A stretch of 64,000 nt of DNA from Mytilus californianus (Eukaryota), in the NCBI RefSeq assembly GCF_021869535.1, contig NW_026262582.1:18786001-18850000 (forward strand), given 5' to 3'. A program made the position numbers and the translations under genes. The notes beneath the pieces are model-generated. The model did no database searches, was not told the DNA's origin, and saw only the letters and a program-made list of their open reading frames with translations. Numbering within the stretch: the stretch's first letter is position 1; each line of letters starts with the position of its first letter. Shown here piece after piece: positions 1-49,000 of the stretch.

Positions 1-731
1 AATGGAATTTAAAAGGCATATAATGTCGTATTCTCCATAGTTGCAGTTTAACTATTGCCATTTTTAGTGACCGGAACGAATAATCTCTAAGTTAATAAAT
101 GTTGCCGACAGTTTTACATCTGTTATTGTTAGTTTATGGTATTTTTGTTTCGTTCTCCCAAAAAATGTTTGACATTAAACCAATGCATAAAAAATTGTAG
201 GAAAATATGTTCTCAAGTGAAAAAAAAACCCCAAACAAACAGGACAGCTTCGTTTGGAACTTGTTCGTGCATTTTAATGCAAAGAGAGGCCTCAGTTCCA
301 CCTCACAATATAAATAACTAATGTTTGGGAACATACATGAGTTAAAGTTATTTTGATGTGACTGAATACGTTTTACAACACTAGTTCAACTAGTAAAATG
401 TGTACGCAATAAAATGTCGAGCTTTAAATAATGAACTTCTATCTTTCTAAATCCAAAAACAACTAGGATAGGAAAAGAAACATGATTGACAAATAAAAAT
501 CAGTGATCCAGTTGAAAATGACAAGCATGCAATAACTTACAATTGAAAATAAAAGGAAGACCTCTCTTCCGACGTACCATGTTAGTGCTGATTCATATAA
601 AAGTAAAATAACTACCTCGCGTAATAATATCAACTGATCCACATTCGTCGAACATTGAAAAGCGAAATACTATGGAATACCTAGACGTTTATATAAAAAA
701 TTCCGTTTCATCTCTTTCTGCCTTTTTACAG

Positions 732-25021: not shown

Positions 25022-28000
25022 ATGTCTAAAATAGCAGAAACACCAGAAGGAAATTCAAATAAAAGCAACCCAGAGACGTCAAATAAGTAAGTTGTAATAC
25101 ATTTCTTTTATCTATATTACATTTAGACCCTTTCGTATCTTTCGCCTTTTTTAAATTCATATATATATAGAAGTTTGACAAACAATAATTTAAATCATTG
25201 AGAAGCTTAACATTTCCATAATCACAGAATGTGATTAAAACGTTCAGCTGATTTTTACAGGGTTATCTCCCTGTAGTGTTGTGTACTACCTTAAGTAATA
25301 AAAAGTAAAGTAACTGTACGTTCCTTGTTTTGTAGGAACTGCATGCTAATATTCTACCAATTATTCGATAGCTCTACATGAATGAATAGTGTTATAAGTA
25401 TTTCATCTGAGATTCTGCAGGGACTAAACGATTAACTTTACTTTCCTTAAGTCGACCAATATTACTACTTAAATAGATTGCAACTTTATATTTGGAATTG
25501 CGAGAATTTTGAAGAAAAAAAAACCTTCTTACCAGCTATTACAATTAATATCAGTTTCCGATTTACAGGATTTAGCAATGTCTAAAAATAAATCAATCGA
25601 TCCACAGTTTGGATTTGTATGATTTCTTATTATTTTACATAGGACATGTTTATCGCCTTTTTGTGAGAACAAAACTGTGTTGCTTAGTAAAAGCTAACGA
25701 AATGATTGTATCGCTGTTTTTTTCATTTTGTCTTGATTCCCGATGCCAACCGACTTGGATGGTATATGGTTGTGAAATGTCTGAAATGTTTGCACTGATA
25801 GGTATATAGGTATAAGAAGATGTGGTATGAGTGCCAATGAGATAACACTCCATCCAAGTCACGATTTGTAAAAGTAAACCAACATAGGTAAACAAAAAAA
25901 GCTTTCAACACGGATCCTTAACTCACACCGAACAGCAAGCATTAAATGACCCAAAAAATTACTAGTGGAAAACCATTCAAACAGGAAAACCAACGGTCTT
26001 ATCTATATAAAAAAAACGAGAAACGAGAAACACTTATGAACCAAATCAACAAACGACAACTACTGAACATCAGGTTCCTATACAATCTTCAATGCGGTAT
26101 AATGTACTATATTTATTTCAGTAATGAACAAATCTGATCATGATTCATCAAGCCGTTACGCACCAATATAATCTGGTATTCAAATGTCATGTGTTTGATA
26201 TTTACAGAGATGCTGAAAATACCGAAGAACAGAATATTTCGAAACTAAAGAAATCTGTATGCCCACAAGCAGAACAGATTCTTAAAATTGCCTTTGCAAT
26301 TTTTCTTTTTATCCTGACGTTTGCAAGTGGATTTATAGGAAGGATAACATTGCATATATTAATATGGCACATCAATCCACCAATAGAATCCCACGTCTCA
26401 AATATCAATACTCTTGGAGGTCTACTGGAACCAAACTGCGCATGTGTCAGCGGAACATCATGCATAGTAAATACTCATTATACTGCTGTTGACGAATCGT
26501 GGATCTGGGCAGTGTTCCTGGTTGTAATTGCACCATATTGCTTAACGTTTCTGTCTACATTTTCTAGAATCTGCTTCAAATCAAATAAAGAATTAGAATG
26601 GAAAGTACTTATGGTAGTAAGTAAATTATAGACAGCTGTGTACAATTGTTCAAATTTCATGATTTTATCAAAACATACAAATCAAAATAAAAAGAAAAAC
26701 TATTAAAAACCATGAACAAATGAAGGTCTTTCAACATGAGATGAGAATTATGGTTTTTGATTAGAAAGACAAAAAAGGTAAAAATAAACACCTATATACG
26801 AGTAAACACTGATTTCAAAAACATATGATTTCTATGCACTTTCATTTGAAATATCGGAGAATATTAGTTACTTTTTGGTGGAAAATTTCACCCTCTTGTC
26901 ATATAAAAGGATATTTTATACAGATTTACCAAAGAAAATATTGGTTGCTAGAGACCTTTCTGTGAAATATAGTGACACTTATGTTTCAATGCCGATATCA
27001 TTAGATAGTTCACTTTACACTGATAATGTATGACTTCTATTTATCTTGCCTAAGAGAGATAGTTCGCTATTCTAGTCATACATGTATATGTCACTTGAAG
27101 GCTACTGTATGCCGATTCTGAAAATATATAATTTCTTAATACTTTCACTTATATATAGTGTAGGCAATGAGTTTGTTACATACCAGAATGAAATAATAAT
27201 CAATTAACCTTAAATTTCACATGTCAGGGGCAATAACTTATATAAGATGTCATCATATCGCTTTTGAACGAATGTATCATTTCTTCTTTTCAATAACCCA
27301 AACATTTTGCATAAGCTCTAATGTATCTTGATTTAATAGTTTGAGAGGAGACGAACACACAAGCAAAGGTCTTTAGATTACAAAAGGGGAAATAGCTCTC
27401 ATATGCCAAAAAATCAAAAGGGTTCCTGTTGCTCAGTCCTTGGTTGTCTGTTTTGCTTTGTTTACTGTTGTTTGTCTTTACTTTTCTCTTTTAAGTCATT
27501 GCGTTTATTTTCGACTTATTAGTTTGAATGTCCCTTTGGTATCCTTCGCTTCAATCCTTCTTCAGATAAAACCGTCATAGCAAAAAAAAAAATAAAAAAA
27601 GAGACGACGAAGTAACAAAAATATCCACAAAACACAAAGAAATTTTGTTTTACTTCAGGTTACACTAATTTTATGTTATATTTCCTTTTTAATCTTCTTT
27701 GGCATGTTTTGGGAAAACATTATCACCCACGTAAATGGTTATTGAGGCATACTTATCTTGTAGTCAGTTGTTTAAAGATTAATATGCTGGAGACATCTAG
27801 CATTGCAGTCATGTGAATACTAATCCCGTCACATTCTGTATGTGACTGTCCAAAGTCAGGAATTTGTAAATCAGTTGATGCCAATCGTTGCTGTATATCA
27901 TCTTTGTTTTGTATATAAATCAGGTCGTCAGTTTTCCCATTTTAAATGGTTTTGAATTTGTCTTTTGGGGACCTTTTGAAGCTTACTATGCGGTATTGGT

Positions 28001-31000
28001 TTGCTTATTATTGAAGGTCGATTGATAATTTATAATTGTTAATTTCTATGTCGTTTTGATATTTGGTGAGCTGTCTCATAGGCAATCATATCACATCTTC
28101 CTATTTATATCTGATTCCATTAGATTTCATTACTCTTGTTATGAATAAAAGGTACAAGGTAGGTTAGGGTCTTGCCTCTGATAAGCTTTGATATCGGAGA
28201 AACACCATACAACCGATATCATATACATATATACTATAAGCTAGGAGTATCTGCTAGGTCCCTTGATATAACGCACTGTGCATTGTAGAACTTTTAGTGT
28301 TTAAAAAAATGGAAATATAATTTTGCAATTTTGCCCGTCTGAATCATCATATTTGGAGCCTGATTTGCCTAACTTTCTGGAGCACTTGAGAACAGCCTCG
28401 GTTTTTGGTGGGGTACGTGTTGTTCAGTATTAGATTTTATATGTTGTGTTTTGTATACTGTTAGGTGTCTTTTGATCTTTTTCCTGTTTCAGACATGGCG
28501 TTGTCAGATTGTTTCCGATTTATGAGTTTGAATGTCTCTCATGATAGTTTCGCCTTCCTTTTGTAGAAAATTGCTCTAACATTTTCTATGCTCGTGTTAT
28601 TCAGACATTTGTGTCAACACAATGCTCGTGTTCTTATGTTCATTTGAATCTATTTCATTAAAGCTGCTAATTTTGACCTTGAAACAAACTCGATGTAATC
28701 ACCTTTACTTTAAATATAAGTTCTGCGCTGTCGATAAAAAATGATGAAATTGCTTGAAACGATTTCCGAAGATTTAAAAATATGTATTTGTTATGGTTTA
28801 TTTGCAGTTACCTGCAAAAAATTGTCATTCATTGTAAATGTGTTGGTCACGGCGGTTGCCTTAATTATAATATGTTCTGAATTTAAGCTCATCGTTATTG
28901 AAACCCTTCATTCAGTTGGACTCTCGATACTGGGATTTCTTGTGCTACCTGCATTTGATCCAGCTTCTTCGTCAGTCGTTTATTTAGCAGTTTGTGGGAT
29001 ACCGCCGATATTAGATCTAATTAATATTATGGCCATGCAACTTAATAGAAAATCTTCTGGAACGAATTCAGAATCAAAACGTCAAAATCCTGCAGCTAAA
29101 ACGAAGGAACAGTCATCATATCGAACGGATAATGAGGCAACGGATACTACGAAAACGAATGAACAGACTTCAAATGGCACGAATGCAGAATCAAAACGTC
29201 AAAATCCTTCACATGAAACGAACGAACAGCCATCATATGGACCGCATAATGAGGCAACGGATACTACGAAAACGAATGAACAGACTTCAAATGGCACGAA
29301 TTCAGAATCAAAACATCAAAATCCTTCACATGAAACGAACGAACAGCCATCATATGGACCGGATAATGAGGCAACGGATACTACGAAAACGAGTGAACAG
29401 ACTTCAAATGGCACGAATTCAGAATCAAAACGTCCAAATCCTTCACATGAAACGAACGAACAGCCATCATATGGACCGGATAATGAGGCAACGGATGCTA
29501 CGAAAACGAATGAACAGACTTCAAATGGCACGAATTCAGAATCGAAACGTCAAAATCCTTCACATGAAACGAACGAACAGCCATCATATGGACCGGATAA
29601 TGAGGCAACGGATACTACGAAAACGAATGAACAGACTTCAAATGGAACGAATTCAGAATCAAAACGTCAAAATCCTTCACATGATACGAATGAACAGCCA
29701 TCATATGGACCGGATAATGAGGCAATCGGTCAACAGACTACAGCCGAGAATAACCCCAAAAATGAGAATACACATGGAGAAAGTTCAAGGGAAGGAACTG
29801 CATGTAAAGGAGATTCTACATTTACTCTATGTAATAAAACATCAAAACTATCCTTTGCATTACCATTCGCAGGGTTAATATTGCATGCTGCAGGCATTAT
29901 TCTTATAACGATTTACATTAATATTGGAACAATGATTGCTTCATTTTTGCTTTCAGTACTACTTATCTCAATGAAATACTGGGAAAACTTTATCACCATG
30001 GGTTCACACGACTCAAAATTTGCTTGCCGCTTGAAACGAGAACTACATAAAAGAAGAACTAAGACTACATGTATAGTCAGTCTTTGGAAAATACTAATTA
30101 CTTTTTGTGCAGTCATCGTGGTATTTGTCAGTAGGGGGAGCGATTCAATGGCTGCATTGAAAGCGTTATTTAACAATGGAATGACGACCATGAATACCGT
30201 CTTTGGAGAGCAACAATTTGGATTCAATCCGGTTTGCCAAACGAATGTGCCATTTTTAACGGCTTTTATTTGTATAATGTGTAACTATCTTTGTTATAAG
30301 ACATCAAAAACAGTATGCGTAATCAACTGCCAAAGGTTTTGCTTCAGTCTACCGATAATGATGCTACCACCTGTGGTTACTATTGTAATGGGAGGCCTGA
30401 TGAATCAACCAGATATTTTAAAATTAGAGTCATGTGATCTATTTTTTTCTGACTGGTGTATCAAAGATAGTAGTCGATTATCTGAAAATTGCACAGAATT
30501 ACTTGCAGCATTTGTTCTGCTGTTTATATCTATTCTTCTCATCACAAGACATGTCTGGAAATCAGATGGCCGGAAAAATGGAGAAACTGCAAGGTTAATA
30601 TTTTTGGTCTGAGCTGATAACATGGATACATTTGTAACTTTGATAAATTGCATTTGTCGACTTGAACGTCATTAAGGTTGATTATTTTTAGTAAATTTCT
30701 TATAGTTGGTCTGCTAATCCACAATGAAGCTTCATAAAGATTTATTTGATCTCTGGCTTTCAAAGCGTAAAATAAGACTATGGGGTATTTGTGATGAAAG
30801 CCCGTTAAAATAATACAAATTAATATGTTTTAGCATTAAATTACAATAAAAAAATTATGCCAATTACATGATAAAAGCATCATATGTCCTTTTCTATATA
30901 AGGAAATGCCTGTACAAAGTTAGGAATATGACAGTCGATGTGTTTGGGCTTTTGATTTTGCCATTTGTTACGGGACATTTTTCTTCGAGTTTGGTGTTTT

Positions 31001-34000
31001 TGTTATTTTAATTTCTCAAAACCGGAAGCGAATAATAATTTTCTTCGAGCATAGGTAATAAAGAAATCATTTCATTGTAGGACGTGGGGAATATCTTTCA
31101 AATAAAAACAATAGAAAAACTGTTAATTATTTCCAAAAGGTCCGATAGTCCTACATTTTCATTCAATTTGGAAAAAATATTAAACATACAAGTAATAGTA
31201 TGGTCGAATGAGAGATCTTTGATAGTGTTTGCCTTATTTATTCGTCGTGTTTCTAGAATATATATCATATTTTAACCTCTATATTGTTTTTTGTTGTTTT
31301 GATTTGCTGATCATGGATTTATTTCAGATTTTAGATTTCAGATTTCGTTTACTTGTAAACTATTGGTTGGTTAAATTATAAACATATTAACATAACAAGT
31401 AACAGTGCAATTACTTTCATTGTTTTATAAAACAGCGTTTGTTTCAGTAGCATACACATCTTGAACATAAATACTCGTTAATAGATAACATGTGTATCTT
31501 TTTTTTCAGGATATTTGTTTCACCATTTTACTGTGGAATGTTTACTGAGCTGTCCTTGTTACTGAATCGTAGAAGAGATGATGACGAATATGACATTGTT
31601 CACCGTGAAAAGGTATGTTCTAACGTATGCTTAACCTTAAGATATAGTCCAGACAAAACGTAAATTTAATGAATAATGTATTAGGTTTCAATTTATCACC
31701 GGATTCAGCCGTGTATAGTACGCAGTTGTGTATAATACACACCTTTTTTCACCCCTCCAAACAAAAAGAAAAACAAAAAGTAGAAAAAAAGAACTAATAA
31801 AAATAAGGATGTAGTATGATTGCCGATGAGACAACTCTCCATCAGAGACCAAATGACATAGAACTGTACCCCTACAGGTCATCGTACAGCTTTCAACAAT
31901 GAGCAATATCCAAACTACATTATTTCATCAAATGATTGATGTATTATGTTTCAGTTTATCACCGGATTAAGCTGTGCATATTACGCAGTTGTGTATAATA
32001 TGCACCCTGCAGTTCATCGTACGGCCTTCAACAATGAGCAAAATCCATGTTACCTATTGTTTGTAATAAAAAAAAATATTAACAGAACGCGTTTATTAAT
32101 ATACTAATCCCAAAGAAATTAAAGGACAACATCCTTTTACACTACAATAAGTTTATTCAATTGATGGTATCCTGTCCAGGCATTTGTGTGCAACAGGTTT
32201 CAAATTCTAGGAAATATGTACCGCAAGTCTAGTTTAATCAGGACAAAAAATGCATAAAAACAAAATGTCAAGCTTTTCACAATATACTTGAAGATTACCA
32301 AATCAATAATTAATTAAATAATTAAGACTTAATGTTGACAATAATGATCTATCAAATGACTAACATTAAACTGTTAAGAAGGAAGTAGGGCATTTATAAA
32401 CAGTGAATGAGTTTGAATAGCAATATACTACAATAACATAAATGGAGCATGTGCTTTTCCGACATACCATGTTGTTTCTGGAACATACGAAATTGAAATC
32501 GATATTATTATTTGTTCACTCATGTTACTTATATCAATTGACAAATAATGGTAGATAACTGCATTGTTTACATTGTCTTTTCCTGTCCAGTACATTTATA
32601 TTTCTAATGTTGAATCCATTTCATAATTCTAAAACATTTGATTTCCATAGAATTAAAGAATATATATAAGTTTTTATTACAGAAATCAGGTGAAGAAAAA
32701 AAGAAGAGGAGAATACTCTATGCTTGTTGTGCCACAATGTGGCATGAAAATGCGGCTGAAATGAGACAGCTGGTAACATCTATTTTAAGGTAATTGCCGT
32801 AATTTGTTCACTTTGTTCAAATAAATGGTTACTTCATTGAGTTTCTGTTATGTTCGGTAGGTACGACGATATATCACAATTAAAGGTTCTACTAAAATTA
32901 GGGGGAACATTGCAAAATCGAATGAACTAACAATTGATAAATCTGATCGAAAATTTATTTGTTGCAACTCATATAAGCCTTTTTTTTAAAATGAGGAGGG
33001 TAAATATAGTTATCAAAGGTACCAGGCTTATATTTTGATACGCCAGACGCGCGTTTCGTCTACATAAGACTCATCAGTGACGCTCCGTTCAAAATAGTTG
33101 AAAAGCTAAACAAGTATAAAGTTAAAGAGCATTAAGGACCCAAACTTCCAAAAAGTTGTGCCAATTACGACTAAGGTAATCTTTGCCAGGGATAAGAAAG
33201 TCCTAAGTATTTCGAATAACTTTTACTTTTGCAAACAGTTAATTTATAAAGGAAAAAAACATATAATTGACATAAACATGATTGGTATACTTACTGAAGG
33301 TGTGATGATATTGATTTTCTCCTTGGCAACATTTGTGTCAGTTCTAATAAAAATTGTAATGACATGTTGTAGGAATTTCTGTGGACACTAAGTGACATTG
33401 CACAAGAGCGGCCATGTTTTTCTCTGACTCTGCTGCATGGAGAACAATGCCAATTATTGTTCTATTAATTAAGGACTTTGAGACAATAAAAATCATCAAA
33501 TCAAAAATTGCTTCAGCAGAATCTGTAAAATGATGCTAAGTCTGTTATTTTGTTGATTGTAGTTATTTCTATGATTTTCTAATGTTGGTAATGGTTGTTA
33601 TCAGTTTGAATTCAATTGATGAGGAATTATGTTAGTTTCTTTGATAAAGTCAGACGTTGTTTAATTTATCTTCATTTCAAAATCAAACTTGGAATAAAAA
33701 ATAGCAGAAACACAGTTATATCTACTTCATTATTAAAATGTAAAAAGGAAGATTTTATCTTTTAAATATTAACATAATTTATACAATCTTGCATATTGGT
33801 ATTTCCCACCAAAGTTTTATGTCATATCATAATCTCAAGGATGAAGGTAAAAGATTGTTTTTAAAAGAAATACTTACAAGGAAGCATGAATATATAACAT
33901 GCTTTAAAAGAGACGGACACCATTGAAAATTTTTAATTTTTCCCTTATGGTGTTACATAAGTGAAATGGTATGTCTCATCAAATAAGAAGTTTCGTCCTT

Positions 34001-37000
34001 GTTATGACATCATTCAATGAGAATAACTGGACTTTTATTTTTTTCGAGAAAATGAATTCTTTGCGAAAACATTAAAAACATGTCTATATTTTATGTATCC
34101 ATCGCACTTCAGGGTTTCAAAAAACGTACGTCGGCGTATAAATCAACGAAATATCTCAATATGAAACCATAGGACTTCAACATGATCCAAATAAACACCT
34201 CAGCGTGATTAAAAACGAACTTCAGCGTGACCAAAACCACACAACAGCGTAACCATATGCATCGCGGTTTATAGTCCTACAAGTACATCATGTTTGCCCC
34301 ATATATCTATTCAAATAATTTAGTGTAAAAGAAATTTACAGATTAAACAGATCAAATTTAATTATGTGTTCACGTATTATATATATCTGTATATGCATAT
34401 TAACATTTTAAAATAGTCCGTCATTCTTGGATCATGTAAAACGTTGTCTTATTGCATTTTTTAAAATCATCTTTCGAAAGTACGAAAAAGTACATATCAA
34501 TTATTAATATTTTTTTTCCTAATCGAATATAGGCAACAGTAATATACCCCTGTTAAAAAGACATAAATCGATTGCGAGAAAATAAATCCGGATTACACAC
34601 TAAAATCGGGGGAAACACATCAACTTTAAGAGGAAACTCTAATTCAACACTGTTATATGACCTATTCTCCTCAAGTCCTTTACTAATGTCTTCTATCTTA
34701 ATATTAAAACATTTTGTCAGAAGTCGTTTGTGTTAAAATAGGTTAGACTTGCGACAGAGTATAAACAAATTTATGGAAGAAGATTTAAAGGAAAATGTCG
34801 AGACATTTGATTTAGAAGGTACTTTTTTAATTTTACTTTTAAGAAAACTAATTTAGACAGAAAAAAAAAAACAGTCATGGTGTGTTTCTTCGTAATTGAA
34901 TAGTTTGCATTTTCTAATGAAAATAGCAGGTTGTACTTTTGTCAATTAGAAAATTACCCAAAGAAAAAATGAAACGTCAATGTGAAATAAAAACATAAAG
35001 CACTGATATTATGATATTTGAAATAATTCATTAGGAAATACACTTCCATGTTTTATTCTACAACATGAATGACAGTTAGATATGTCAGCCTGCAAGAAAA
35101 GACAACCACTGCAATACAGCTCATGAAATGGAAGAACACAAAATATATTTCAGAGCGCTCAACCTACTTCTTACATTAGGTGGAAAGTAATATAAAAACT
35201 GAAGAAAAGACCAAACTGAAAATATCAGTTTGACAAGGGCTGACTTATTTGGTCGTTATTATCAGAACAGCATAAACATTTAACAAAAGATCAAATATAG
35301 TACCGATCTCGGCGTTGTTGCAGCAAATTCAATTTTGTCTAAGGCCCAATCTCAACTTATGGATAGAATTTTTGTTCATAAATCAACATATTAATCTGCA
35401 CAAATCCTACAGATTTAGTGAAAAAACGTGATTATGAAAGAATGTGAGAAAAAAACATGGCCATACAATATAAAACAAATTGATTTTTCAGCTCATGTAT
35501 TTTTTGATGATGCATTTTTACAACCAACGGACACACAAAGTCAAAGAAGAGAAATGAATACATATGTTAAAACCTTCATACAAGAATTGAGTGATGCTAC
35601 CAGGTATGTTCAACTTTACAATGAAAGGAATTTAGTTGTCTTTAATGCTTATTACAAGAACGCAAACTTAATATATTGATTGATTTTTCAAATAAACATA
35701 TAATTGAACTATGCTTATTTGCTTTCTGTGAAGAATATGCACTACCTCTCAGTCGACCATGGCCAGTATTTAAAAAAAAATCTGAAAAAAAACTATACAA
35801 TTAGAAAAATAACAAAAATAACGATCTCTAAGGAAAATTAAAAACAGAAAGTCCCTTATCAAATGAAAAAATCAAATGCTCAAACGTATCAAACGACCGG
35901 AAAACAGCGGACATATTTCTGACTTGGTACATTACTTTATGTATGCAGAAAATGGAGGGTTGACCTAGTTTAATAGCTTGCTAAATCTCTCACTTGTTTG
36001 AATGTGGCAAAGAGTTCAATATCATTGACAGCAATGCGTAAAACAGATTTTATATTGTTCTGTGTTTATTGTATCGAATTTTGCTTTTTTATGTTTTTAA
36101 CAAATTAGTTTCTTTACTTGAAAAACCCATTGTCATCATCTTATCAATATTCTTCTATAAAAAAAACAAAAATTAAGTTATTCAAACTACAAATGTATAG
36201 TCTAATTTAAATTTAAATGAGACAGACATTCCAGGAAAACTTTAGTTTAAAAAAGACAAGTATTTGAATATATGAAATCGCCCTTGACGGATATTTTTTT
36301 TTATTATGTAATAGTTTCTCTGTATAAAATCTTTACATCAAATATTTTCTTTATCAGGGATTTTTATGAAAAACAAATTGAATTACCAGACGGCGGTATG
36401 CTTAGAACTCCTTATGGTTCTAGGATTGAATGGACACTTCCTGGAGAGAATAAAATGTTCGTTCATTTGAAAGACAAGACAAAAGTTCGAAACAAGAAGC
36501 GCTGGAGTCAGGTACATGAGACCATTAAATATTGATATCAATCCTTATCTATTTATAAATTATTTTCCTCGACCAAATCCATAATTTATATGAAGAACAA
36601 GAACTTGTGCTTTCTTATGTGAAAATGATCGGAGATCAGTGATATGATTCCTAAGTGTCATATAAATTGTTATATTTTTGTAAATGCATGAAAATATATA
36701 ACAATATTTCAAATTATAAATAGACAAAGTCTTTTCTTGGGTTAAAAACATAGAATTATATTTTCCTATTTTTCTTTTCAAGAAAAGGGCAGCAATTGCA
36801 AACATTGCGCACTGTCATGTGAGCTCTTGAGACTAACTAATGTTGCACATTACACAATGCGTCATTACGAATCTACCGTTAAAAATCAATTTGAAAAGAT
36901 AAATATTTTTTTCCTTCTAATAAATTAAAATTTTACACTACATTGTTAGGTCAAATTTTAGTAAGCACAATGAAAAGATAAAATATTAAAAACATTCCAT

Positions 37001-40000
37001 TCAAATATTTTATGAAATGGAAGAAATATAGTCATATATATCTATTTTAATGTTTATTTTTTATTCATTTTGATAACTTAAGATTTCAAATTCAAGAACG
37101 CTTGACATACACATGAAACATTAAACTAGTTAACGGTGTGTCCGTCTATGTTTTTAGCTAAAGAACAAACAGTTAATCTAGCAAAATGTCTGTTTGACAA
37201 TGTGTCATGGAAAATCAGTTAATTTTTCGGGCAAGAATGGGAGTTTCAATTATAGCATTTTAGTTGCACACGGTTATTTTAGCATATCTAATTTTGTTAT
37301 GTAGAAAGATTACATCACAAGAATGTTTTACTTGATCCATCAATTTTGCTTCGTACATCTAGTAACACGATGTTTTGTATGACTATTTGTTTTTGATTAA
37401 AAAGATATTTTACATATTTTAGCTCCAAACCATAATTTATATGACAGTTGCTTTCTAGTTGGTTAATACAGTGTAACGTTGATTGTGTCTTTTTTTCTTT
37501 TTTTGTTGTTTTTATTTTCCCTTTTCTTAATTTACCTTCGAGTTCGATAATTTTATTAATACTTTGTTTGTGTATACAAAGGTATTATCGATTTAATCGA
37601 AAACGAGTTTATGATACAGATGCATTTAACATTTAATTATCATAGGAACAGTTCTAAACAACCCCAAAATGGGAGTCGTTGTGTATCTTATACGATAAAG
37701 AGTGCAATGGCTTTTGTTTACATTTTACTGAATATCACCATAACAATTCTGTTTATTACAAATTCTAATATGACGTTCTTCAAACACTTAGTACACACCC
37801 GTGTTAAAATTCGAACATATTCATATGTCAGTTGATTGCAAAAGTCATGCTTCGTTTGGGCTGTTCGAATCCAACTCCCACGTCATATGATTTTTCGGAA
37901 TAATTAACCCCACGTCAGATGGTGTAAATGACGTCAGGATGTAAGGATTTTACGGGAATAAGCAACGAATAGGAAACTGAAAATCGTCAAAACACAAAAT
38001 CATAAACAAACGATGGTAAGTGTATAAAGTCCATATCTACTAAATAAAATGAAGATAGTCAATTAAACTCATCCACATCTGTCTTAGTATGTTATTGTTT
38101 ATCGATTAAGAATGTCACTTTTTCAATTGCCTACGTCGTTTACGTCAATATCAATAGTGTGTTCAATTACTGGAACAGCAAACATTGCCCTTCACATAGA
38201 GCGGTTAGATCAAATAGAATTGTGTTTGTCCTTTTAGAATAGAAATAATTCATTGGGGCTTGAATTTGTATTGATTTGTTTGATCCTTTATGCTGATACC
38301 CCCGTTGTCGCTAGTGGTAAACGTTTTAGCATAAAGGGCCAATCTGTGGTAAAATCACGATAAGTTCAAGCCCCATACATTATTTTAAAAAAAATCAAAA
38401 AACTGTCAAACTAATAAGGTTAAAAAACGATCATTCATTAAGGATTCATTCCAGGTTATGTCTTGGCAGGGTGCAAAAACTTGTGTTACTAGGCATTACA
38501 GAAAATGTATTTATATAATTCAGGTTATGTATATGCTGTACATTTTGAAATGGAAAATACCACGGATTCTAAAACCCGAAAAAAACTACAACAGTTCAGA
38601 AACCAAACGCAAGAAAGAAATTGATAAAAAGAAAGGAAAGTTAAATAAAACGAAAGAAGAGTTAGAAAGAAAGTTAAAAAGAAAGTTAGAAAGAAAGAAA
38701 CAAATCCAGGAAATAGCTGAAAATACCTTCCTACTAGCTCTTGATGGAGATGTTGACTTCCAACCAGAGGCTGTACTAAGTTTAATGAGACGAATGGAAA
38801 AGAACGATAAAGTAGGGGCAGCATGTGGCAGAATTCATCCCATTGGAAATGGTATGTTATTGTGGGTTTATTGATATACTTGTTTTCGTTTTAGAGCAGA
38901 AAAAGACGTATTTGAATAAAAGTGGTTTATATTTAGGAATATTCAAATTGATTATAAAGACTTTTTTTATTGAAACGTGTTGTATACTTCTTCATAATGG
39001 TTTGTATTGATCTTCTTTGTGATGTCATCCACAACATTTGGCCTCCGAAGGGTCATAGTTTCATTGGCAATCAAACCTCATCTCCTTATTTCAATTTCAA
39101 CAGTTTTTTTTTCAATTCATATTACTAACTGTAACCTGCACATAAATGACATAGACATACAGATTTTTTTAAACGCTGATATATATATATCGGATTTCAT
39201 TTGGTGTTTTCAAATTTAAATTAGAATATTATAAAAGGGCATAACACAGGGATTCTTTTCTATACTTTACTTTGGTTATAATCTGTCTACATGTTACTTA
39301 GATTAAACACATAATGACTTATTAAAAGAGAAATACAGTCCGTACCACCAAAAAAAACATAGCAAAATGTTCCCTTTGCTATGGAATCAGAATTTACATT
39401 AAATAATAGTATAGAAATGTAGTACAGCTTGGTTAGTTACACATGATATCAAACAATCCGTCTGTCAAATGTTGTCAGATGAGTGGCGTTCACAAGTTGG
39501 GATTGTTTAAACATCTTAAAGCTGGCCAAAGTTCCATAACTGTTGTAAAAATGATCGAATGTGATGGTGAAGGTTGTTCAAGAAAAAAATAAAGACAAAT
39601 AATCCTAAGTCTACAAGTTATCTGTCAAACAATTTAATTTATTGAATAAAATGTGTTTTGGGGTGTCTTGGAGACTTTTGATATCCCAACGGAAGTAGCC
39701 GTCGGCGGGGACAATTACTCTTTAAGAAATAGACAGATTTTCCACATCATGAGCGTCTCTATCAATATTATGACATTATTTAGCCTAAGTTTTTTTTATT
39801 TTGAACAAAGGCATGTTCATGTTTTATAAACAGGTCCTATGGTTTGGTATCAACAGTTTGAATATGCTATAAGTCATTGGCTTCAGAAGGCAACTGAACA
39901 CGTGATTGGTTGTGTCTTATGTAGTCCTGGCTGTTTCAGTTTGTTCCGAGGTTCTGCAATATTACAACACGAAGTACTTGAGACATATACTTCAGTTGCA

Positions 40001-43000
40001 CAAGAAGCAAGACAGTGTTTGCAGTATGATCAAGGTAAGTTTATTTATTTAATATGTGAATACTTCATCATGTTATGACACAATGTCTCCGTCATCCCCT
40101 GTTCCTTTATCAAAGTGTTCGGGTATAATTATAAGATTGAATGATTGTTATTGAGATTACTATTCAAAACCAATCAGCTTCAGTGATCTGCAGATATTTT
40201 TTCTATATAAACTGACCAATATATGACCAAACCAACATTACTTCAGTACACAGAATGATTAAGGGAATGCTGTGGTTAAGAATAGATATCTGATCTTGAC
40301 TGATTATTAAAATCTGTACTATTAAATATTGAATAATCTATGATATTTGATTAAATTTCATTATTTTGAGAAAACGTAAAACTTGATCACAGTGGTAACA
40401 TAATAAAAGATAAAAATAACAACTGTTACGCTGTATTTATATTGGGCAAAAACAATAAACTGATTGACCAGAATAGTAACAATGGCAGACTTAAAGTAGA
40501 TGATCTAGATTATGTGCCACAAGATAATTCGAGGGTAGAAAAATGAATCTTTATAAGAAAACACGAACAATTAAATTTCAAATTAGTAGAAATGATTTTT
40601 GGCAAGATTTGTTGTACGTTTTTCTGCCATCGTTGTCAGCATAATGAAATTGTATAGGACATACAAGTGAGAGGTTTAAATAGCTATAAAATTAGGTTTA
40701 ATCCACCTTTTACTGCAAAAGAAAATGCCTGCATCAAGTCAGGAATATGACAGTTTTTGATTTTACCATTTGATAAGGGCTTTTAGTTTTCCTCGGGGTT
40801 CGGTATTTTTGTTATTTTACTTTTGATCATAAAGTAACCAGGGCCATAACTTCTTCAAAACCGGGCGATATTTACGAGAATCTGTATTTGCAATGTTAAT
40901 ACTTGTGCTTGTGCAATGAACATGTGCCGTTGACATTAAATTTGGGATTTCGTCGACTGCCATACTTTCTTCCCAAAGTTCTGAAGTAGAGGATGTTTCA
41001 GGCATTTTCTCGGCATTTCTTGTATAATTATTATTTTATCGCGACCAACAAATTTAAATGAGAGCGACGTACTTTGATAAGACAAATCAATTTGCTATAG
41101 GCATTCTTACAAAATGTACACACGAACCAAAAACAAAAAACTGACAAGGACTGAAAAACGCCTTTAATGGAGACAAATACTGCATTTAAAAATACCTTTT
41201 GGTTTTTTAATCGAAATTATAGCAAGTATACTCTAAAGATTATGATTTGAGAAAATGATAGAGAAAATGATTGAGCGTAAATTAAATTCATTCCATGATA
41301 ACATTAAGACCGCGAAAATTAGCTAGTGAGTTGAAATACCGACCTATCGTATCGATGAAAAAAATTCGTGATTACACTTATATAAACCGTCGATTTCAGT
41401 TGTCTTTCCCATATCTCTGTTGGGGTAGTTTTCATGAAAGGAGCACTTCTCTGTTCATGAAGTCCGTATAGTGTGAACATGTACATGGAAGCGCGTATGT
41501 TCTTAATGTGATATTTAACATCAATACGAGTGTGGTTCTTCAAGGAGAATGATATTTCTTTAATTAACGCTAGGAATTTGCATATAAGTTTCACATTTTT
41601 GTAGGAAAAGCTCTCGTTAATGAGATCATGTAAACAATCTTTCTATTGAACATGGGGCATACATGTACATAACAATTTTTTTATATATCACTGTAATCTA
41701 ATTTAGATTGGGGTAACGATTTTAAATTAACACCTAAGATTTGTTAACTATCCCCATCTTATAGACACCACTGGTTGATTATACCGCATCCCATTACTTC
41801 TGCAAGCCACTTTTGAAAAGCATTTAGGTGAACACCTGATTAGAAAAAAGTCAGGAACCATACTGATTAAAACCATTTTGAAATCACAATCATACTTTTT
41901 GAATGCTGAAAAACTTTGATATTGAAAATATTTTGTTTTCATTTTTACATTGGCCAAATCAAATCTGAAGTTGCAGACAACTTAAAATCAATAAAAAATT
42001 TCAAAAGTTATGACAAATAAGACAAATGCAATCTATTCCTCGGGGAAGAGACACCTTGATGTTTCGAAAGGCTCGATATTTTAAAAACAGTTAACTTACA
42101 GAAAGGAAACATGCCAATGTGATATTTAGTTTATTCATATTATCTTTTCCGGGTTGTTTTTTGTTTGTTTGTTTTTGTTGGTCTTGACATTGGTATTATA
42201 ATGTTTCGTGTCAACGGTTGTAGTTAAATCAAACGTTTTCAATTGCACTGGACCAGATCGGCATTTTCATGATCAAGTTATTTAAAGAAATAAAGTTTCT
42301 GCTTTAAAATGAAAATGTGATTTTATTTAATTTTTTAAATATCTAATCTTACTTTTGTCAATGTTTACGGTGTATGAATGCGTTTGCTTTTGTTGTAGTT
42401 CAGTGTTTCTATTGCTCCGTTGTTTTCCTCATATGGTTGATGTGTTTCCCTCGGTTTTAGTTTGTTTTCCGGATTTGTTCTGCTTAATTGAATTTCGACT
42501 ATGGATCCGTGGTATATTACAGTTGCCTTTATTTACTATCCAATGAACAGTCGACTTTCAGTTTCAGCTTTCATTCTTCTCAGTAGTCTACAAATAACAT
42601 ACACAAGCATGATGTACTATTCGTTGCTATTCAAAATGTCATGAAAATAATTTTTCGCCTGTAAAAATGAAAATTATCCGTCAGGTAAAGTTTACCACAG
42701 AAGTAGTTAGCAGCTCTACATCATGCAGATGTAATAATGCCCTTTTTTGGTTTAAATAACCGTACCAGATCCAGAAACATATGTTTTGCACACTAAAATA
42801 TGTATCCAATATCTGTATTTTGATAACATTCTATGCAAACAAATATCTTATACACCGGCAAGGTTATACATAACATACGTTTGTAAAATATAACTCTCAC
42901 TTATTTTTATATATTTTTTCAAATAGTAATCAGAATTGGAGAATGTGTCAAAGAGACAACAATCCGACCAAAGAGTAAAAAAAAAAAAAAAAAAAACAAC

Positions 43001-46000
43001 AGCCGAAGGCCACCTCTGGGTCTTCAACATAGCGAGAAAAATCCCGCATCCGGAGGAGGACTTCAGCTGGCCCTTAATCAAAAATGTGTATTAGTTCAAT
43101 GAAAATGGACGCCATATTAAACTCCTAAATATACAAATGAACTAGAATTAAAAAAAAAACCATACAAGACTCAACAAAAAAACCATCCATACGCACGCAA
43201 AGCAAACAAAGGCTAGAGGTCTTGACTTAGGACAGGCGCAAATATGAGGCGGGGTTGAACATTTTTAGTGAGATCTCAACACTCCCCTATACCTCTAGCC
43301 AATGTAGAGTAAATAAATACACAGCAATACGCACAGTAATTCGTAGTTTAAAGGAAGTCCGAGTCAGTTGTCAGAATAGGTAACAAAAGAAACTAAGCAA
43401 ACTGTGTGTTTAAGCACTTGTAAACGAAATTTGATCTCAACTTATTTTGACAGGCGAAGATCGATGGTTATGCACTCTGCTTCTTCAAAAAGGATGGAAA
43501 ATTGAATATTGTGCAGAATCAGATTCGCATACATTTGCTCCCGAATCGTTTAATGAATTCTACACCCAACGTAGACGTTGGACACCTTCAACTATGGCCA
43601 ACATCTTAGAAATTATTCAAGACTGGAAAAATGTAACCAAAAATAATGAAAATATATCCTTCCTGTACATTGTGTATCAATTCATTTTGTTTGTTTCCAC
43701 AATTCTAACACCAGGAACAATATTCATGATTATCTTGGGAGCATTAATTGTTGGATTTGAGAGCATTCCGCCATGGTTAGCACTTATCTTAAACCTCATT
43801 CCAGTAATAGTGTTTATATTGATGTGCCTGTATACCTCAACTGAACGTCAGGTATGTATGTTATCTGTATAAAAAAAGATACAACTCATATGTATATGTA
43901 TGTTATCGATGAACATAAAAAAAACGTAATCAATTCGGGGGATTAGTTAAGATTAGTTCACAGGAATATAATGAAATTCACATAAGGACAACTATTCAGT
44001 GTTAACAATTCAATTGGTCATACAATCAACCTCTCACGAGGCAAATACTGTAAATGATGTATGTAGTTAGTGTATCGCCTCTATGAAGTACTAAAATTAA
44101 GACTTATGCGTGCCAAAGCATTGAAAATTGGTTAAACATTATGGTCGTGTTGGTTGTTTTGGTACCCAGTAATGGTAAGTCAAAAATATTAGGCATGTAC
44201 TAAGGCAAACCTAATACACATAACATTACAATGGAGTTTATTCCTCTTATCTTTAGACATTAATTATCGAAATGCGCAACTGGTGCAGAAAAAATAGTAT
44301 ACTTACTGTTATACCTACACTGAGCCAGGACCTCGTAAGCCGGGTAGTATAAGTAGTTCAACAGCTGTATGACTATCCTGTCAACACTGAGGTTGTGAGT
44401 TCGAATCTAGTATTAGCAGGTGTATTCGACTTCAATCTTAAATGATGGAGATTGTCAGTTATCCTACCAAAAAGTCAGTGGTTCTCTCCGGGTACACTGG
44501 CTTCCTCCACCAATAAAAAAACTGACGTCCAAGAAAAAGCCAATAGTGCTAGAAGTGGCATTAAACACCAAACAATAAAAAAATCAACGAATCAATGTCA
44601 CTTGGCCGAACCAATGATTTCGGCACTGTGAAAATATGGATATAGTTTGATTGAAATTTGCTGATGTTTAGCTTATATTTTTGAATTAAGAAGTGTATCT
44701 CCCTCATTCAAACTGTTTTTTAATCTAAATCAGAAAAAGGAAGAGGTTAGAATGTTTTTGGTTTTCGTTTTTTGTAATAGCGTTGTCGGTTAGCAATCGA
44801 CGTGTGAGTTACAATATCCCTTTATTATCAGCTGACACTCTATGAAAAGAAGAACACACAGTTTTGACTTTTACATGAGTACTGAGATTCTTTCGAATAC
44901 TTCTGTTCTTCAAACACATCAAATGAGTTTTCAGATGTGAATCTATCATTTTGATGGTGTCAATTTTTGTACTTCGTTAATATTTTGTTAAACTTATTGT
45001 CCAAACATACCTTATTTGTAAAATCTAAATTAGCCATCGCTTTTTAAAACGAAAATTAAATACCCGTGTTCAAGTGAAAAGGTCAAACGTTCTTATCTTT
45101 GTCATCGAAAAGAGCATCGTTTTTTTGCACTAACAGATATATATAAAATTGAGAATGGAAATGGGGAATATGTCAAAGAGACAACAACCCGACCAAAGAG
45201 CACACTACAGCCGAAGGCAACCAATGGGTCTTCAACGCAGCGAGAAAATCCGCAGCCGGAGGTGATCTTCAGCTGGCCCCTATATAAAATTGTGAACTAG
45301 TTCAGTAAAAATGGACGTCACCCTAAACTCCAACACATATAAATGAACTAAAATTTAAAACATACCAGAGGCTCCTGACTTTGGACAGGCGCAAAAATGC
45401 GGCGGGGTTAAACATGTTTTGTGAGATCTCAACCCTCCCCCTATACATCTAGCCAATGTAGAATAAAGAAACACATAGCAATACGCACAGTAAAACTCAG
45501 TTTAAAAAAAGTCCGAGTCCGATGTCAGAATAGGTAACAAAAGAAACTAAGCAAAATGACAATGATACATAAATGAACAAAGGACTACTAGCAGTTACTG
45601 ACATGCCAGCTCCAGACCTCAGTTAAACTGATTGAAAGATTATAACTTCATCATATGAAAATCAAGTACAATCCCTCCCGTTAGGGGTTTAGTATCATAC
45701 CATCATAAAATATATGAGAATAACATAACCCGTATCATGCCAACAACTAGTTTTAGAATAAATGTGTGTAATTCCGATGCAAAGACCCTATGAGTGAATC
45801 AATATTAATACCAAAATATGCAATCCTTAATGACTTGACAACAGTATCGTAACTATATCCTTTCCAAATAAGTCTGTTTAAAGGTTTGGTTAGCTTTTGA
45901 GGTGAATGCCGACACTTTTGTGCTTTGTAAAGAATATTACTATAAAATATTAGTTGTGAAATACCTGAACGTATAAGATGTCTGCATGTTGATTTATATT

Positions 46001-49000
46001 TAAGAATGATGTCCTTGTACCGATGATAAAATTAAGTAAATGTTTTGACCAGTTTGTGATATCGAAAACCCTGGTGTAATAATTTTTCAGTAATACAGAG
46101 ATTTCTTTCGTTGAAATCAAATACGTTGTTACATACTCGAGCGCATCAAACAAGCTGAGATGTATAAACACCATAAGATGGCGACAATAGGAAATGAAAG
46201 ATCATCTCTTTTATCATAAATTTTGGTATTAAGCTTCCCGTTAAAGATAAATATATCAAGATCCAGGAAAGGGCAGTGTTCATTGTTAGTATTAGCATTA
46301 TTTAAAATTAGTCTCCAGGATAAATCTCTTTAGTGTACATACTGAAGTCGTCATTATTGAGAACCAAAACATCATCTAAATATCTAAAAGTGTTGTTAAA
46401 TTTTTGAATCAGATGTTGTTTCAATGGGTCTTTGCTGATTTTATTCATAAATTGTAACTCATAACAATACAAAAACAGATCCGCAATAAGTGGTGCACAG
46501 TTAGTCCCCATGGAAATTCCGATAACCAGACGATATACGGAATCTCGTTAGCGAACAAAAATGTTATCTAGTAAAAATTCAAGGGCAGTTATAGTATCAA
46601 AGCAGGTCCAACTGACATAGTTGTAAAATACATGTATACTTATTTCTAGTGACTGTATAATGAATTGAATCATTATCTCAAACGGTATATAAAAATTGCT
46701 GAGTTAGATTGCTGACAAATAAAAATACATTGTGTATAATATGATAATATAACATCTTCACACGCTTATAACACATATTTTATGTCTATCTCTAGATTCG
46801 CCTTCCGTGACAAGGTAACACTATGACTATTGAAGTTATATTTTATAGCGGATGTGGTCGAGTGGTCTAGAGCGCTGGACATGAGGCTAAGCGATTGGTG
46901 CTGTACAGTATCAAAGGTGTGAGTTCGAATCCTGTTAAGGGACAAACATATGTCAGCATAAAAATCTAATCCTAACACTGCTGGGTGTAATTTGCAGTTT
47001 TATATAAATATCTGTATTAACTCTGTACCTCAAACACACTGAGATCCAGTGGGCATATATATGTATGGTTGTCACTTGCTAAGACCTGTGTGTATGATAT
47101 ACCTATTTCTAGTGACTGTATAATGAATTGAATCATTATCCAAAACGGTATATAAAAATTGCTGAGTTAGATTGCTGACAAATAAAAATATGTTGTATTG
47201 TCGGGTGGTCTAGAGCGCTGGATATGAGGCTAAGCGATTGGTGCTGTAGTGTATCAAAGATGTGAGTTCGAATCCCGTTGAGGGACAAAAATTTGTCAGC
47301 ATAAAATCTAATTCTAACACTGTTGGGTGTAATTTGCAGACTTATATTTATATATATATATAGAATAGAGAGTGGACACGAGGAATTTTTCAGGGAAACA
47401 ACGACCAGATCAAATAGCATAAAACAGCCTACCTGCATCAATGGGTCTTCAGCGCAGCGATAAAATCATACACTTGACGGTGGACTGCAGCAGTTCCTAA
47501 ACAAAAAACAAATACTAGTTCAGCAACATTAATGTCACATCAAACTCCGAAACATAGATAATATATGATGACGATTTTTAATGATATTGATTTGTTTGTT
47601 TAAAAAAAAAAACATCTTTATGTCTACAAAACAATGCTATAAATTAAAACAGGATAATCTTGTCTTTCTTTCTTTCTTCTGTTAAAACTCAGTACATTCA
47701 ACTTAGACTTAATTAAAAAAAATTATTATACTTGGTGTTTTTCACGGATTTACGAGATTAACCTTACTTCTATTTATTTACTACCTGAATTTTTTTCAGT
47801 TGCAAATGGCCGCCGTATTATCTTGCATATACGTGATTGTAATGGTTGTTGTTATGATCGGAGTAGTACGAGACGCCATACTTGAGGGTTTGTGCTCAAC
47901 GACAACCATTTTTATAATGTTTGTGGCTGGAGTGTTTGTCATATCAGCTATTCTTCACCCAAAGGTAAATGCCTGGATGAATTCCCAGATATCTTGTTTT
48001 GAAAGATAGGTTATTACAATTGTGGCATGTACATGTTTTAATAGAAATAATCAAAGATTATTATACTTTATCGAAAACATAGCTGATACATGAAAGAATT
48101 TAATCCAGAAAAGATATACAAAAAAATTAATTAGTAATATATAAATTCTCCTCATGATAGACTACGTATACTAAAGTTAATGATACAATGAGTTCAAATG
48201 GTGCTCAAACTTTATTTAAAACTCACCAAAGATACTGGGCTATAATTTTGTAACGCCAGACGCGCGTACAGTCTACAAAAGAATCCTCAGTGATGATGTA
48301 AGCAAGTAGTAAATAAACAGTTATCGTCTTAAAAAGACTCATCTGTGACGCTCGAATAAAAAAGTAAACAAACAGTTTTTTTTTTCTTTTCCCCTTTTGT
48401 AAATGACCATTTAGTATGTTATTGTACACTGAATCTTGTTATCGTTCAGTATAAATAAAACAAGTTCATTTTTAGTTCATTGTTGCGCATGTTTGTTCTG
48501 TATTCGACTATATAGTTTTCCAATTACTGCATAGCTTTTTGTATGAAATCGTTGTAGGAGATCCTCTGCATTCTTCCTGGGTTGCTATATTTTTTGGCCA
48601 TACCTTCAATGTCTATGTTGATGTTTCTGTTTTCAATTGGTAATCTTCATGTCACGTCATGGGGGACACGAGACACCGAAACGAAAAAGAAGCCAGACGA
48701 TAAAGCAAGCACAGAGCAGATAAATGGGAAAAATGACGCTGAATATCTTTGTTCGTTTGGAAAGATTGTTTGGTTAGTGAATTTGTTTTTTTTTATTTTT
48801 TCTGTGTCAATTCTTTCATTTCTTTCTTTCCATATGGTTAACATTAATATAAAAATAAGTAGATGTAGTATGATTGCCAATAAGACAAACTATCCAAAAA
48901 ATTTCAATTTAATTGGATGCAAGCAATTATAGGCAACCGTACGGTCTTCAACAATGAGAAAAGTCCATACCATATGGTCAGCTATAAAAGTAGAAAAATA

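What the first reader, a model, noticed from the sequence alone, without database searches (positions are those of the whole stretch)
29050..29724. A 225-aa array of near-identical 39-aa acidic S/T/N repeats inside the membrane domain of a chitin synthase
Seen: about 5.8 units differing by only 1-2 residues each (first unit more diverged), in frame between the 4th and 5th predicted TM helices. Per unit: 12 S/T, 6 N, 7 D/E versus 3 K/R, one NGT sequon, one S-H-E and one T-N-S-E. Established: this loop is short in characterised animal chitin synthases. Inference: a recent, probably length-polymorphic disordered module. Counting helices (Cys-rich loops after TM1, 7 and 9 outside) places it in the cytoplasm as a multivalent phospho or scaffold platform. 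If it is instead luminal, it would be a glycosylated, Fam20C-type acidic tract of the kind associated with biomineral matrices. Strongest candidate for an undescribed chitin synthase architecture.
Basis: partly seen in the sequence, partly recalled or inferred. Interest (0 to 1): 0.75.

Follow-up and report, generated by a model that had tools for sequence, protein, structure and literature searches.

The report
Repeat-expanded cytosolic loop in mussel chitin synthase
A 117-base repeat has recently grown to nearly six copies inside a coding exon of a California mussel chitin synthase, lengthening a floppy loop that most likely faces the cytoplasm; this looks like ordinary fast evolution of a tolerant loop rather than a new enzyme design.

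Summary
TRF finds 5.7 copies of a 117-bp unit with 95% matches at 29058-29725. They lie in frame in the large exon 28888-30593 of "gene B". The window is Mytilus californianus, 100% identical to GCA_021869535.1, a 45x HiFi assembly.

Units 2-5 differ from their consensus by 1-2 bases each. The array sits between TM4 and TM5 of the N-terminal 10-helix domain (Pfam PF23000). AlphaFold2 models it as coil with pLDDT about 40.

The array is not unique to this gene. Orthologues carry the same 39-aa unit at the same site: 1.8 units in M. coruscus and 2.8 diverged units in M. edulis and M. galloprovincialis, including RefSeq models. Two neighbouring paralogue clades have 49-124-aa loops of like composition. 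About 105 other homologues have a median loop of 16-20 aa. The window's 269 aa is the longest.

Three lines place the loop in the cytoplasm: helix parity, an SLC35/DMT-fold match (Z 16.6) and positive-inside counts. Private substitutions look near-neutral (7 nonsynonymous, 3 synonymous).

Best reading: a recently expanded coding minisatellite in a tolerant cytosolic loop. Retention in mRNA and length polymorphism were not tested, because read laying was lost. The scaffold idea remains speculation.

The parts
25022..25086 (+). gene B coding exon 1: start codon plus 21 codons
   Evidence: tblastn with the N-terminus of the M. edulis orthologue P0169; donor GTAAGT
26208..26616 (+). gene B exon 2: TM1, Cys-rich outer loop, TM2, start of TM3
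   Evidence: tblastn; splice sites; hydropathy
28888..30593 (+). gene B exon 3 (1706 nt): TM3-TM10 of the PF23000 domain, holding the array
   Evidence: Pfam PF23000, E 1.2e-06; acceptor tttaag|CTC and donor caag|gttaat; homologue alignment
28891..29070 (+). TM3 (28891-28953) and TM4 with its helical extension (28960-29070)
   Evidence: AF2 model of the window exon: helices 2-22 and 25-61
29047..29163 (+). repeat unit 1, the older diverged unit, shared with M. coruscus
29164..29631 (+). repeat units 2-5 (4 x 117 nt), each 98-99% identical to their consensus; absent from the M. coruscus orthologue
29632..29724 (+). partial unit 6 (31 codons), shared with M. coruscus, running into the unique tail of the loop
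29071..29835 (+). whole predicted disordered loop between TM4 and TM5 (model residues 62-316)
   Evidence: AF2: coil, pLDDT about 37-50; the orthologue model shows the same
29836..29988 (+). TM5 (29836-29916) and TM6 (29926-29988): a helical hairpin that sets the parity
   Evidence: AF2 helices 317-343 and 347-367; 322-349 and 352-373 in the orthologue
30055..30543 (+). TM7 (30055-30135), TM8 (30247-30321), TM9 (30331-30405), TM10 (30493-30543)
   Evidence: AF2
31510..52058 (+). gene B exons 4-15: 31510-31612, 32683-32789, 34742-34818, 35492-35603, 36358-36511, 38524-38851, 39834-40034, 43454-43851, 47800-47964, 48558-48772, 49768-49832, 51112-52058. They encode the GT2 catalytic domain and the C-terminal TM region.
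   Evidence: tblastn with P0169; splice sites; frame check gives 1683 codons and no internal stop; Pfam PF03142 hits

Best explanation
The array is a coding minisatellite with a 117-nt period (39 codons). It lies in the TM4-TM5 loop of the N-terminal SLC35/DMT-like 10-helix domain of a Mytilus-specific, myosin-less chitin synthase. This is gene B of a tandem gene cluster on M. californianus JAKFGE010000010.1. The unit arose before the Mytilus species split. Orthologues keep 1.8-2.8 copies. In the M. californianus lineage, four more copies were added recently, by unequal exchange or replication slippage; that mechanism is inferred. The added sequence encodes about 156 further residues of polar, acidic, A-rich-codon sequence (S/T/N/Q/E/K), predicted to be disordered. 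It is tolerated for three reasons: the period keeps the reading frame, the loop faces the cytoplasm at the edge of the transporter-like fold, and the loop is already hypervariable in length in this paralogue group. Most likely it acts as no more than a flexible cytosolic spacer under weak constraint. Shown: the repeat, its frame, its position, its distribution among orthologues, its predicted disorder and its predicted topology. Inferred: the mechanism of expansion, near-neutrality and presence in the mature protein.
For: Repeat and frame. Species and assembly: the window is 100% identical to M. californianus GCA_021869535.1, built from 45x HiFi reads with mean length 13.4 kb (PMC9710001), so a 668-bp array is easily spanned. 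Orthologue series: M. coruscus P0012 has 1.8 units, and M. edulis P0013/P0169 and M. galloprovincialis P0003/P0170 have 2.8 diverged units. The M. galloprovincialis locus L001 is collinear with the window, and its array shows 80-82% matches. Orthology: window+P0012 and P0013+P0003 form a clade with 99/99 support. Loop hypervariability: one search gives the length distribution; paralogue clades have loops of 49-53 and 84-124 aa with the same composition. The unit has no relatives elsewhere: phmmer against 1.84 billion representatives gave 157 hits, and the 150 listed all match best in the flanks, with only P0012 also reaching the array. Pfam finds nothing in the array, and the window holds no other copy. 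Near-neutral change: 7 nonsynonymous and 3 synonymous private substitutions, pN/pS 0.66. Disorder. Cytosolic side. Splicing out is unlikely on sequence grounds: the exon has no GTRAG donor, the array is 42% A, and RefSeq models of two sister species translate their arrays.
Against: There is no read-level RNA evidence for M. californianus. The RefSeq product for gene B is 1388 aa, against the 1683 aa I derive. I could not retrieve its sequence, so I cannot exclude that it omits part of exon 3. However, exon 3 holds no GT..AG pair of the required 885 nt, and a model that lacks the last exon gives 1387 aa. Ten substitutions are too few to separate neutrality from weak selection. An NGT motif recurs in units across orthologues and in some paralogue loops, which a purely neutral view explains only by common descent. 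The M. coruscus count comes from a Nanopore-based assembly (Table in PMC9710001), which could have collapsed copies.
Confidence: 0.68

Rival explanations
1. The array is a selected, functional cytosolic module. It would be a multivalent, phosphorylatable or protein-binding disordered platform that changes trafficking, clustering or regulation of this chitin synthase.
For: The cytosolic side is supported. Each unit has one S/T-x-x-D/E and one S-x-E motif. The loop composition (ST 0.22-0.33, NQ 0.17-0.23) is kept across three paralogue clades although their sequences differ, and net charge is acidic only in the gene B and P0009-type loops (-4 to -17) and about zero (+1, 0) in the gene A-type loops. 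All orthologues kept at least 1.8 units.
Against: There is only about one kinase-type motif of each kind per 39 residues. Private changes are mostly nonsynonymous (7:3). Copy number differs freely between species (1.8, 2.8, 5.8). The composition matches what A-rich codons give in an AT-rich genome: the array is 42% A and the genome about 32% GC. Most homologues work with a loop of 16-20 aa.
Confidence: 0.15
2. The loop is extracellular or luminal. It would then be an N- and O-glycosylated, possibly Fam20C-phosphorylated, mucin-like acidic tract presented at the site of chitin extrusion.
For: There is one NGT sequon per unit, six N-x-S/T in the loop, 29% S/T and 7% P. A Cys pair and an N-K-T sequon lie just before TM5. 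A low-complexity charged domain of mollusc ArCS1 (E22) has long been treated as extracellular (bioRxiv 10.64898/2026.08.31.748318).
Against: This reading needs TM4 not to span the membrane and TM5/TM6 to be a single helix. AF2 gives a confident hairpin with pLDDT above 90. All ten helices superpose on SLC35B1, with 287 of 295 residues aligned at Z 16.6. Positive-inside counts favour the cytosolic assignment four to one. The NGT motif is lost in M. californianus gene A, which has NDGN. The Cys pair is not kept in M. edulis.
Confidence: 0.07
3. The array is not part of the mature protein or is not real. It might be spliced out as an exitron, gene B might be poorly or not at all expressed, or the copy number might be an assembly artefact.
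For: The RefSeq product for gene B is 295 aa shorter than the full conceptual product. The RefSeq model of neighbouring gene A starts inside the equivalent loop although its upstream exons are intact. I obtained no RNA reads.
Against: Exon 3 has no GTRAG donor and no 885-nt GT..AG pair, and the array is purine- and A-rich with no polypyrimidine tract. 295 is not a multiple of 39. A model lacking only the last exon gives 1387 aa. Gene B is intact over 15 exons. RNA or probable-RNA runs hold 24-49% of the exon's sampled words. The assembly is HiFi at 45x and QV60. Unit-specific variants mark each copy.
Confidence: 0.08

Closest known systems
Orthologous Mytilus chitin synthases: M. coruscus CAC5405894.1 (P0012), M. 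edulis CAG2190747.1 / XP_071150683.1 (P0013 / P0169), M. galloprovincialis XP_076089128.1 (P0170)
   Same: They share the gene (clade support 99/99), the exon structure and the 39-aa unit at the same TM4-TM5 position. P0012 is 96% identical to the window over the TM flanks.
   Different: They hold 1.8 or 2.8 units against 5.8 here. Their units are diverged (80-82% matches at DNA level in L001), whereas units 2-5 here are 98-99% identical to their consensus.
Neighbouring paralogues in the same tandem cluster: gene A (XP_052079459/60) and the P0009 type (XP_052079458.1)
   Same: They have the same domain order and the same loop position. Their loops are lengthened (49-53 aa and 84-124 aa) with similar S/T/N/Q/E/K composition.
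   Different: They hold no clean tandem array. The P0009-type loop has only degenerate internal motif repeats, and the gene A loop has none.
E22 low-complexity domain of the myosin-chitin synthase ArCS1 of Atrina rigida (Weiss and co-workers; bioRxiv 10.64898/2026.08.31.748318)
   Same: It is a charged low-complexity insert in a mollusc chitin synthase membrane region. Its side of the membrane is debated, and AlphaFold gives it low confidence.
   Different: It sits in the C-terminal TM region after the SWGTRE motif, not in the N-terminal domain. It is lysine-rich and is not a near-identical tandem array. That enzyme also carries a myosin head, which gene B lacks.
SLC35 / DMT-fold nucleotide-sugar transporters: human SLC35B1 9gry, TPT 5y78, CMP-Sia transporter 6oh4, Vrg4 5oge
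   Same: The N-terminal domain that carries the array superposes on them as a 10-TM fold, with Z 16.6, 12.3, 8.2 and 7.6. In that fold both termini and the TM4-TM5 loop lie on one side; this last point is my own knowledge of SLC35 topology.
   Different: Sequence identity is about 10%. The domain here is fused to a GT2 synthase. Transport activity is unknown. The TM4-TM5 loop of the transporters is short.

Membership tests
Animal (type II) chitin synthase, GT2 | Chitin_synth_2 catalytic domain | tested here: met
   PF03142 hits on gene B exons at 39839-40075 (E 4.3e-09) and 43447-43869 (E 2.7e-13)
Animal (type II) chitin synthase, GT2 | Catalytic and translocation motifs: EDR, QRRRW, SWGTR | tested here: met
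   GEDRWLC, QRRRWTPS and TSWGTRD are read in the window's translated exons
Animal (type II) chitin synthase, GT2 | N-terminal multi-TM domain (PF23000 ChitinSynthase_IV_N) | tested here: met
   28.1 bits against a cut-off of 23.5; ten helices in the AF2 model, pTM 0.80
Myosin-head chitin synthase (ArCS1 type) | N-terminal myosin motor domain | tested here: not met
   Only about 41 residues precede TM1 in the orthologue. Exon 1 encodes 22 residues. The precomputed Pfam lists of the orthologues hold no myosin family.
Coding minisatellite / in-frame tandem repeat | Head-to-tail units whose period is a multiple of 3, inside an exon | tested here: met
   Period 117, 5.7 copies, no indels, in frame
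Coding minisatellite / in-frame tandem repeat | Copy number varies between related genomes | tested here: met
   1.8, 2.8 and 5.8 units in three lineages
Coding minisatellite / in-frame tandem repeat | Copy number varies within the species | not tested
   Read laying was lost.
DMT / SLC35 transporter fold (the host domain) | Ten TM helices superposable on a solved DMT transporter | tested here: met
   VIA-align Z 16.6, rmsd 4.8, 287 of 295 residues of 9gry_A. The next DMT members score Z 12.3-7.6 and unrelated folds score 5.3 or less.
DMT / SLC35 transporter fold (the host domain) | Solute transport activity | not testable with these tools
   A shared fold does not show function.
Secreted mucin-like / Fam20C-type acidic tract | Exposure to the secretory lumen or the outside of the cell | tested here: not met
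   This is a prediction only. Helix parity, the DMT fold and positive-inside counts all place the loop in the cytosol.
Secreted mucin-like / Fam20C-type acidic tract | Dense S-x-E or PTS composition | tested here: inconclusive
   29% S/T and 7% P, but only 4 S-x-E motifs in 226 residues

The most novel reading that the evidence does not exclude
The expansion is adaptive. On this reading, M. californianus has built a species-specific multivalent cytosolic tether on one chitin synthase paralogue, made of about six phospho- or partner-binding units. The tether would change how the enzyme is clustered or delivered, and so how chitin is laid down in shell, byssus or another tissue. Copy number would then be a tunable trait.
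Probability: 0.1. Interest if true: 0.6.

Novelty: new variant of a known kind. Interest (0 to 1): 0.3.

Why it matters
The finding shows that the TM4-TM5 loop of the transporter-like N-terminal domain of animal chitin synthases tolerates very large disordered inserts. It grows from about 16 aa to 269 aa within one mussel gene cluster. That is useful for three purposes: choosing tag or epitope insertion sites, trimming constructs for structural work on mollusc chitin synthases, and a possible copy-number marker in Mytilus populations. It does not by itself reveal a new enzymatic mechanism. If the array proved to be selected and modified, it would be a rare example of repeat-number tuning of a polysaccharide synthase.

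Tried and rejected
No letters of 32053-32089 were sent to any search tool afterwards. Two local blast scripts still used the unmasked window file on the closed machine. From then on I masked 32041-32100.

2. Looking for RNA-derived protein fragments of gene B by word search. Only genomic-exon-type ORFs of other species came back, and none from M. californianus gene B.

3. Retrieving the RefSeq product of gene B. The look-up of encoding contigs gives only its start (window about 22829) and its length of 1388 aa. The sequence itself could not be fetched. The length arithmetic is suggestive only.

4. Exitron idea. Exon 3 has no GTRAG donor and no 885-nt GT..AG pair.

5. Transposon or satellite origin of the unit. 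The window holds no other copy, and orthologues have the unit at the same site, so I rejected this.

6. Solved structures for the N-terminal domain by sequence. Only the GT2 core matches. Foldseek was weak, with E above 1. VIA-align wide then gave the DMT fold.

7. The joined 15-exon model was assembled only inside one local script, to count codons and stops. It was not printed, stored or searched.

8. Literature. Three searches found no paper describing this loop array or the SLC35-like nature of the domain. The held library is incomplete.

Full report
**What is there**

Tandem Repeats Finder reports one array at 29058-29725: period 117, 5.7 copies, 95% matches, no indels, score 1203. In codon register the units start at 29047, 29164, 29281, 29398, 29515 and 29632. 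The sixth stops after 31 codons, at 29724.

Units 2-5 differ from one another by 3-4 bases. Unit 1 differs from them by 18-19 bases.

**Where it sits**

The window is Mytilus californianus. A locus fetched from GCA_021869535.1 (JAKFGE010000010.1) is 100% identical to window 1-27889. That assembly was built with hifiasm from about 45x PacBio HiFi reads with mean length 13.4 kb (PMC9710001). A 668-bp array with unit-specific variants is therefore unlikely to be an assembly artefact; this is an inference.

The window holds two tandem chitin synthase genes on the + strand.
- Gene A is XP_052079459/60, 99-100% identical in several exons.
- Gene B carries the array.

Guided by the M. edulis orthologue, I place 15 coding exons for gene B, from 25022 to 52058. 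Their lengths sum to 1683 codons with no internal stop. That was a local frame check only. The joined model was never printed or searched, and all searches were done exon by exon.

The array exon is 28888-30593.

**The host domain and the side of the membrane**

The exon belongs to Pfam PF23000, the "chitin synthase N-terminal putative transporter domain".

An AlphaFold2 model of the M. coruscus orthologue's first 640 residues (62-row alignment, pTM 0.80) gives ten long helices. The repeat loop (residues 220-321) comes out as coil with pLDDT below 50. The 45-residue hydrophobic stretch after it forms a confident helical hairpin, TM5/TM6. The model of the window's own exon shows the same. Its residues 62-316 are coil with pLDDT about 40.

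Searched against 48,161 solved chains, the model matches DMT-fold transporters:
- human SLC35B1: Z 16.6, 287 of 295 residues aligned
- triose-phosphate translocator: Z 12.3
- PfCRT, LicB, CMP-sialic acid transporter and Vrg4: Z 9.2-7.6
- unrelated folds: Z 5.3 or less

So there are ten spanning helices with both ends on one side of the membrane. TM10 runs straight into the GT2 domain, which is cytosolic in every solved processive GT2 synthase; that is established knowledge. The TM4-TM5 loop is therefore cytosolic.

Short-loop K+R counts agree: 24 in 115 residues inside against 6 in 109 outside. I put the cytosolic assignment at about 85%. It remains a prediction.

**How common it is**

The array is not unique to this gene.
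- The M. coruscus orthologue (P0012, 96% identical over the TM flanks) has 1.8 units. These correspond to the window's unit 1 and partial unit 6.
- M. edulis (P0013, RefSeq P0169) and M. galloprovincialis (P0003, RefSeq P0170) have 2.8 diverged units.
- The M. galloprovincialis locus is collinear with the window, introns included. Its array shows only 80-82% matches.

These four genes form one clade with 99/99 support.

The two neighbouring paralogue clades have loops of 49-53 aa (gene A type) and 84-124 aa (P0009 type). Their S/T/N/Q/E/K composition is like that of gene B's loop. Gene A of M. californianus has a 53-aa loop without repeats.

Among about 105 homologues in which both flanks could be anchored, the loop has a median of 16-20 aa and a maximum of 164. 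The window's 269 aa is the longest.

The 39-aa unit has no detectable relative outside this orthologue group.
- phmmer against 1.84 billion representatives gave 157 hits. The 150 listed all match best in the flanks, and only P0012 also reaches the array.
- Pfam finds nothing in the array.
- The window holds no other copy of the unit.

**How it most likely came about and what it does**

The unit predates the split of the Mytilus species. Four extra copies of the distal-type unit were added on the M. californianus lineage. Alternatively they were lost or collapsed in M. coruscus, whose assembly is Nanopore-based.

The ten private substitutions in units 2-6 are 7 nonsynonymous and 3 synonymous. 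That gives pN/pS 0.66, against a neutral site ratio of 3.6:1, so it cannot be told apart from neutrality.

The array is 42% A in a genome of about 32% GC. A-rich codons give exactly the N, T, E, K, Q and S seen here.

My best reading, at about 0.68, is a recently expanded coding minisatellite in a structurally tolerant cytosolic loop, acting at most as a flexible spacer. A selected phospho or scaffold platform (0.15) is not excluded. It has no positive support beyond conserved composition and one CK2-type and one S-x-E motif per unit.

A luminal glyco- or Fam20C-type tract (0.07) conflicts with three independent topology arguments. In addition, the NGT motif is not kept in gene A.

**What could not be shown**

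Retention of the array in mRNA and length polymorphism were not tested. Two local scripts still used the unmasked window file, and I masked 32041-32100 from then on.

Indirect evidence favours retention:
- Exon 3 has no GTRAG donor.
- RefSeq models of two sister species translate their arrays.
- RNA or probable-RNA runs hold 24-49% of the exon's sampled words.

A caveat remains. The RefSeq product on record for gene B has 1388 residues, which is 295 fewer than my model, and I could not fetch its sequence. Exon 3 has no GT..AG pair of 885 nt, and 295 is not a multiple of 39. A model that lacks the last exon and reads through after exon 14 gives 1387 residues. The shortfall is therefore more likely at the 3' end than in the array.

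**Comparison with what is known**

The closest precedent for a low-complexity insert in a mollusc chitin synthase is the E22 domain of ArCS1. That domain is lysine-rich, lies in the C-terminal TM region and has a debated topology. Tandem duplication and diversification of lophotrochozoan chitin synthases is known (PMC3942024).

I found no paper describing this loop array. I classify it as a new variant of a known kind: an ordinary enzyme with a lineage-specific repeat-expanded loop. Interest is modest, at 0.3.

Noticed in passing
window 26208-30593 (gene B exons 2-3); model of P0012:1-640: The N-terminal 10-TM domain of this animal chitin synthase (Pfam PF23000, 'putative transporter domain') superposes on SLC35/DMT nucleotide-sugar-type transporters: Z 16.6 to human SLC35B1 with 287 of 295 residues aligned. 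A transporter-like module is thus fused to the synthase that uses UDP-GlcNAc. The held library had no paper on this.
   Followed up: partly
L002:6602-10900 (M. californianus, upstream of window position 1) and window 1-17889: The RefSeq model of gene A (XP_052079459/60, 1206/1205 aa) starts at a Met inside the TM4-TM5 loop and lacks TM1-TM4. The three upstream coding exons are nevertheless intact in the genome. Either the annotation is truncated or there is an internal transcription start in the loop region.
   Followed up: partly
window 38524-38851 (gene B exon 9): A second length-variable low-complexity tract lies inside the catalytic-domain region. It is K/E-rich (KKEIDKKKGKLNKTKEELERKLKRKLERKK) and is 17 residues shorter than in the M. 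edulis orthologue.
   Followed up: no
window 33008-33094 and 9211-9290; L001:7895-7981: The segment holding the hammerhead-ribozyme candidate noted by the first stage (33040-33085) is a dispersed repeat. It recurs in a gene A intron (84% identity) and at a non-syntenic place in the M. galloprovincialis locus (91% identity). It is therefore probably part of a mobile element.
   Followed up: partly
protein P0020 (M. galloprovincialis 'chitin synthase, partial', 1487 aa): This public model looks like a fusion of two tandem genes. Residues 25-473 match gene A-type exons, and residues 585-1308 match gene B-type exons of the window.
   Followed up: no
window 49768-49832 and downstream intron: Read-through of the exon 14 donor gives an 18-19-codon alternative C-terminus. 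The resulting 1387-aa product would lack the last two TM helices. The RefSeq product length of 1388 aa is close to this.
   Followed up: partly
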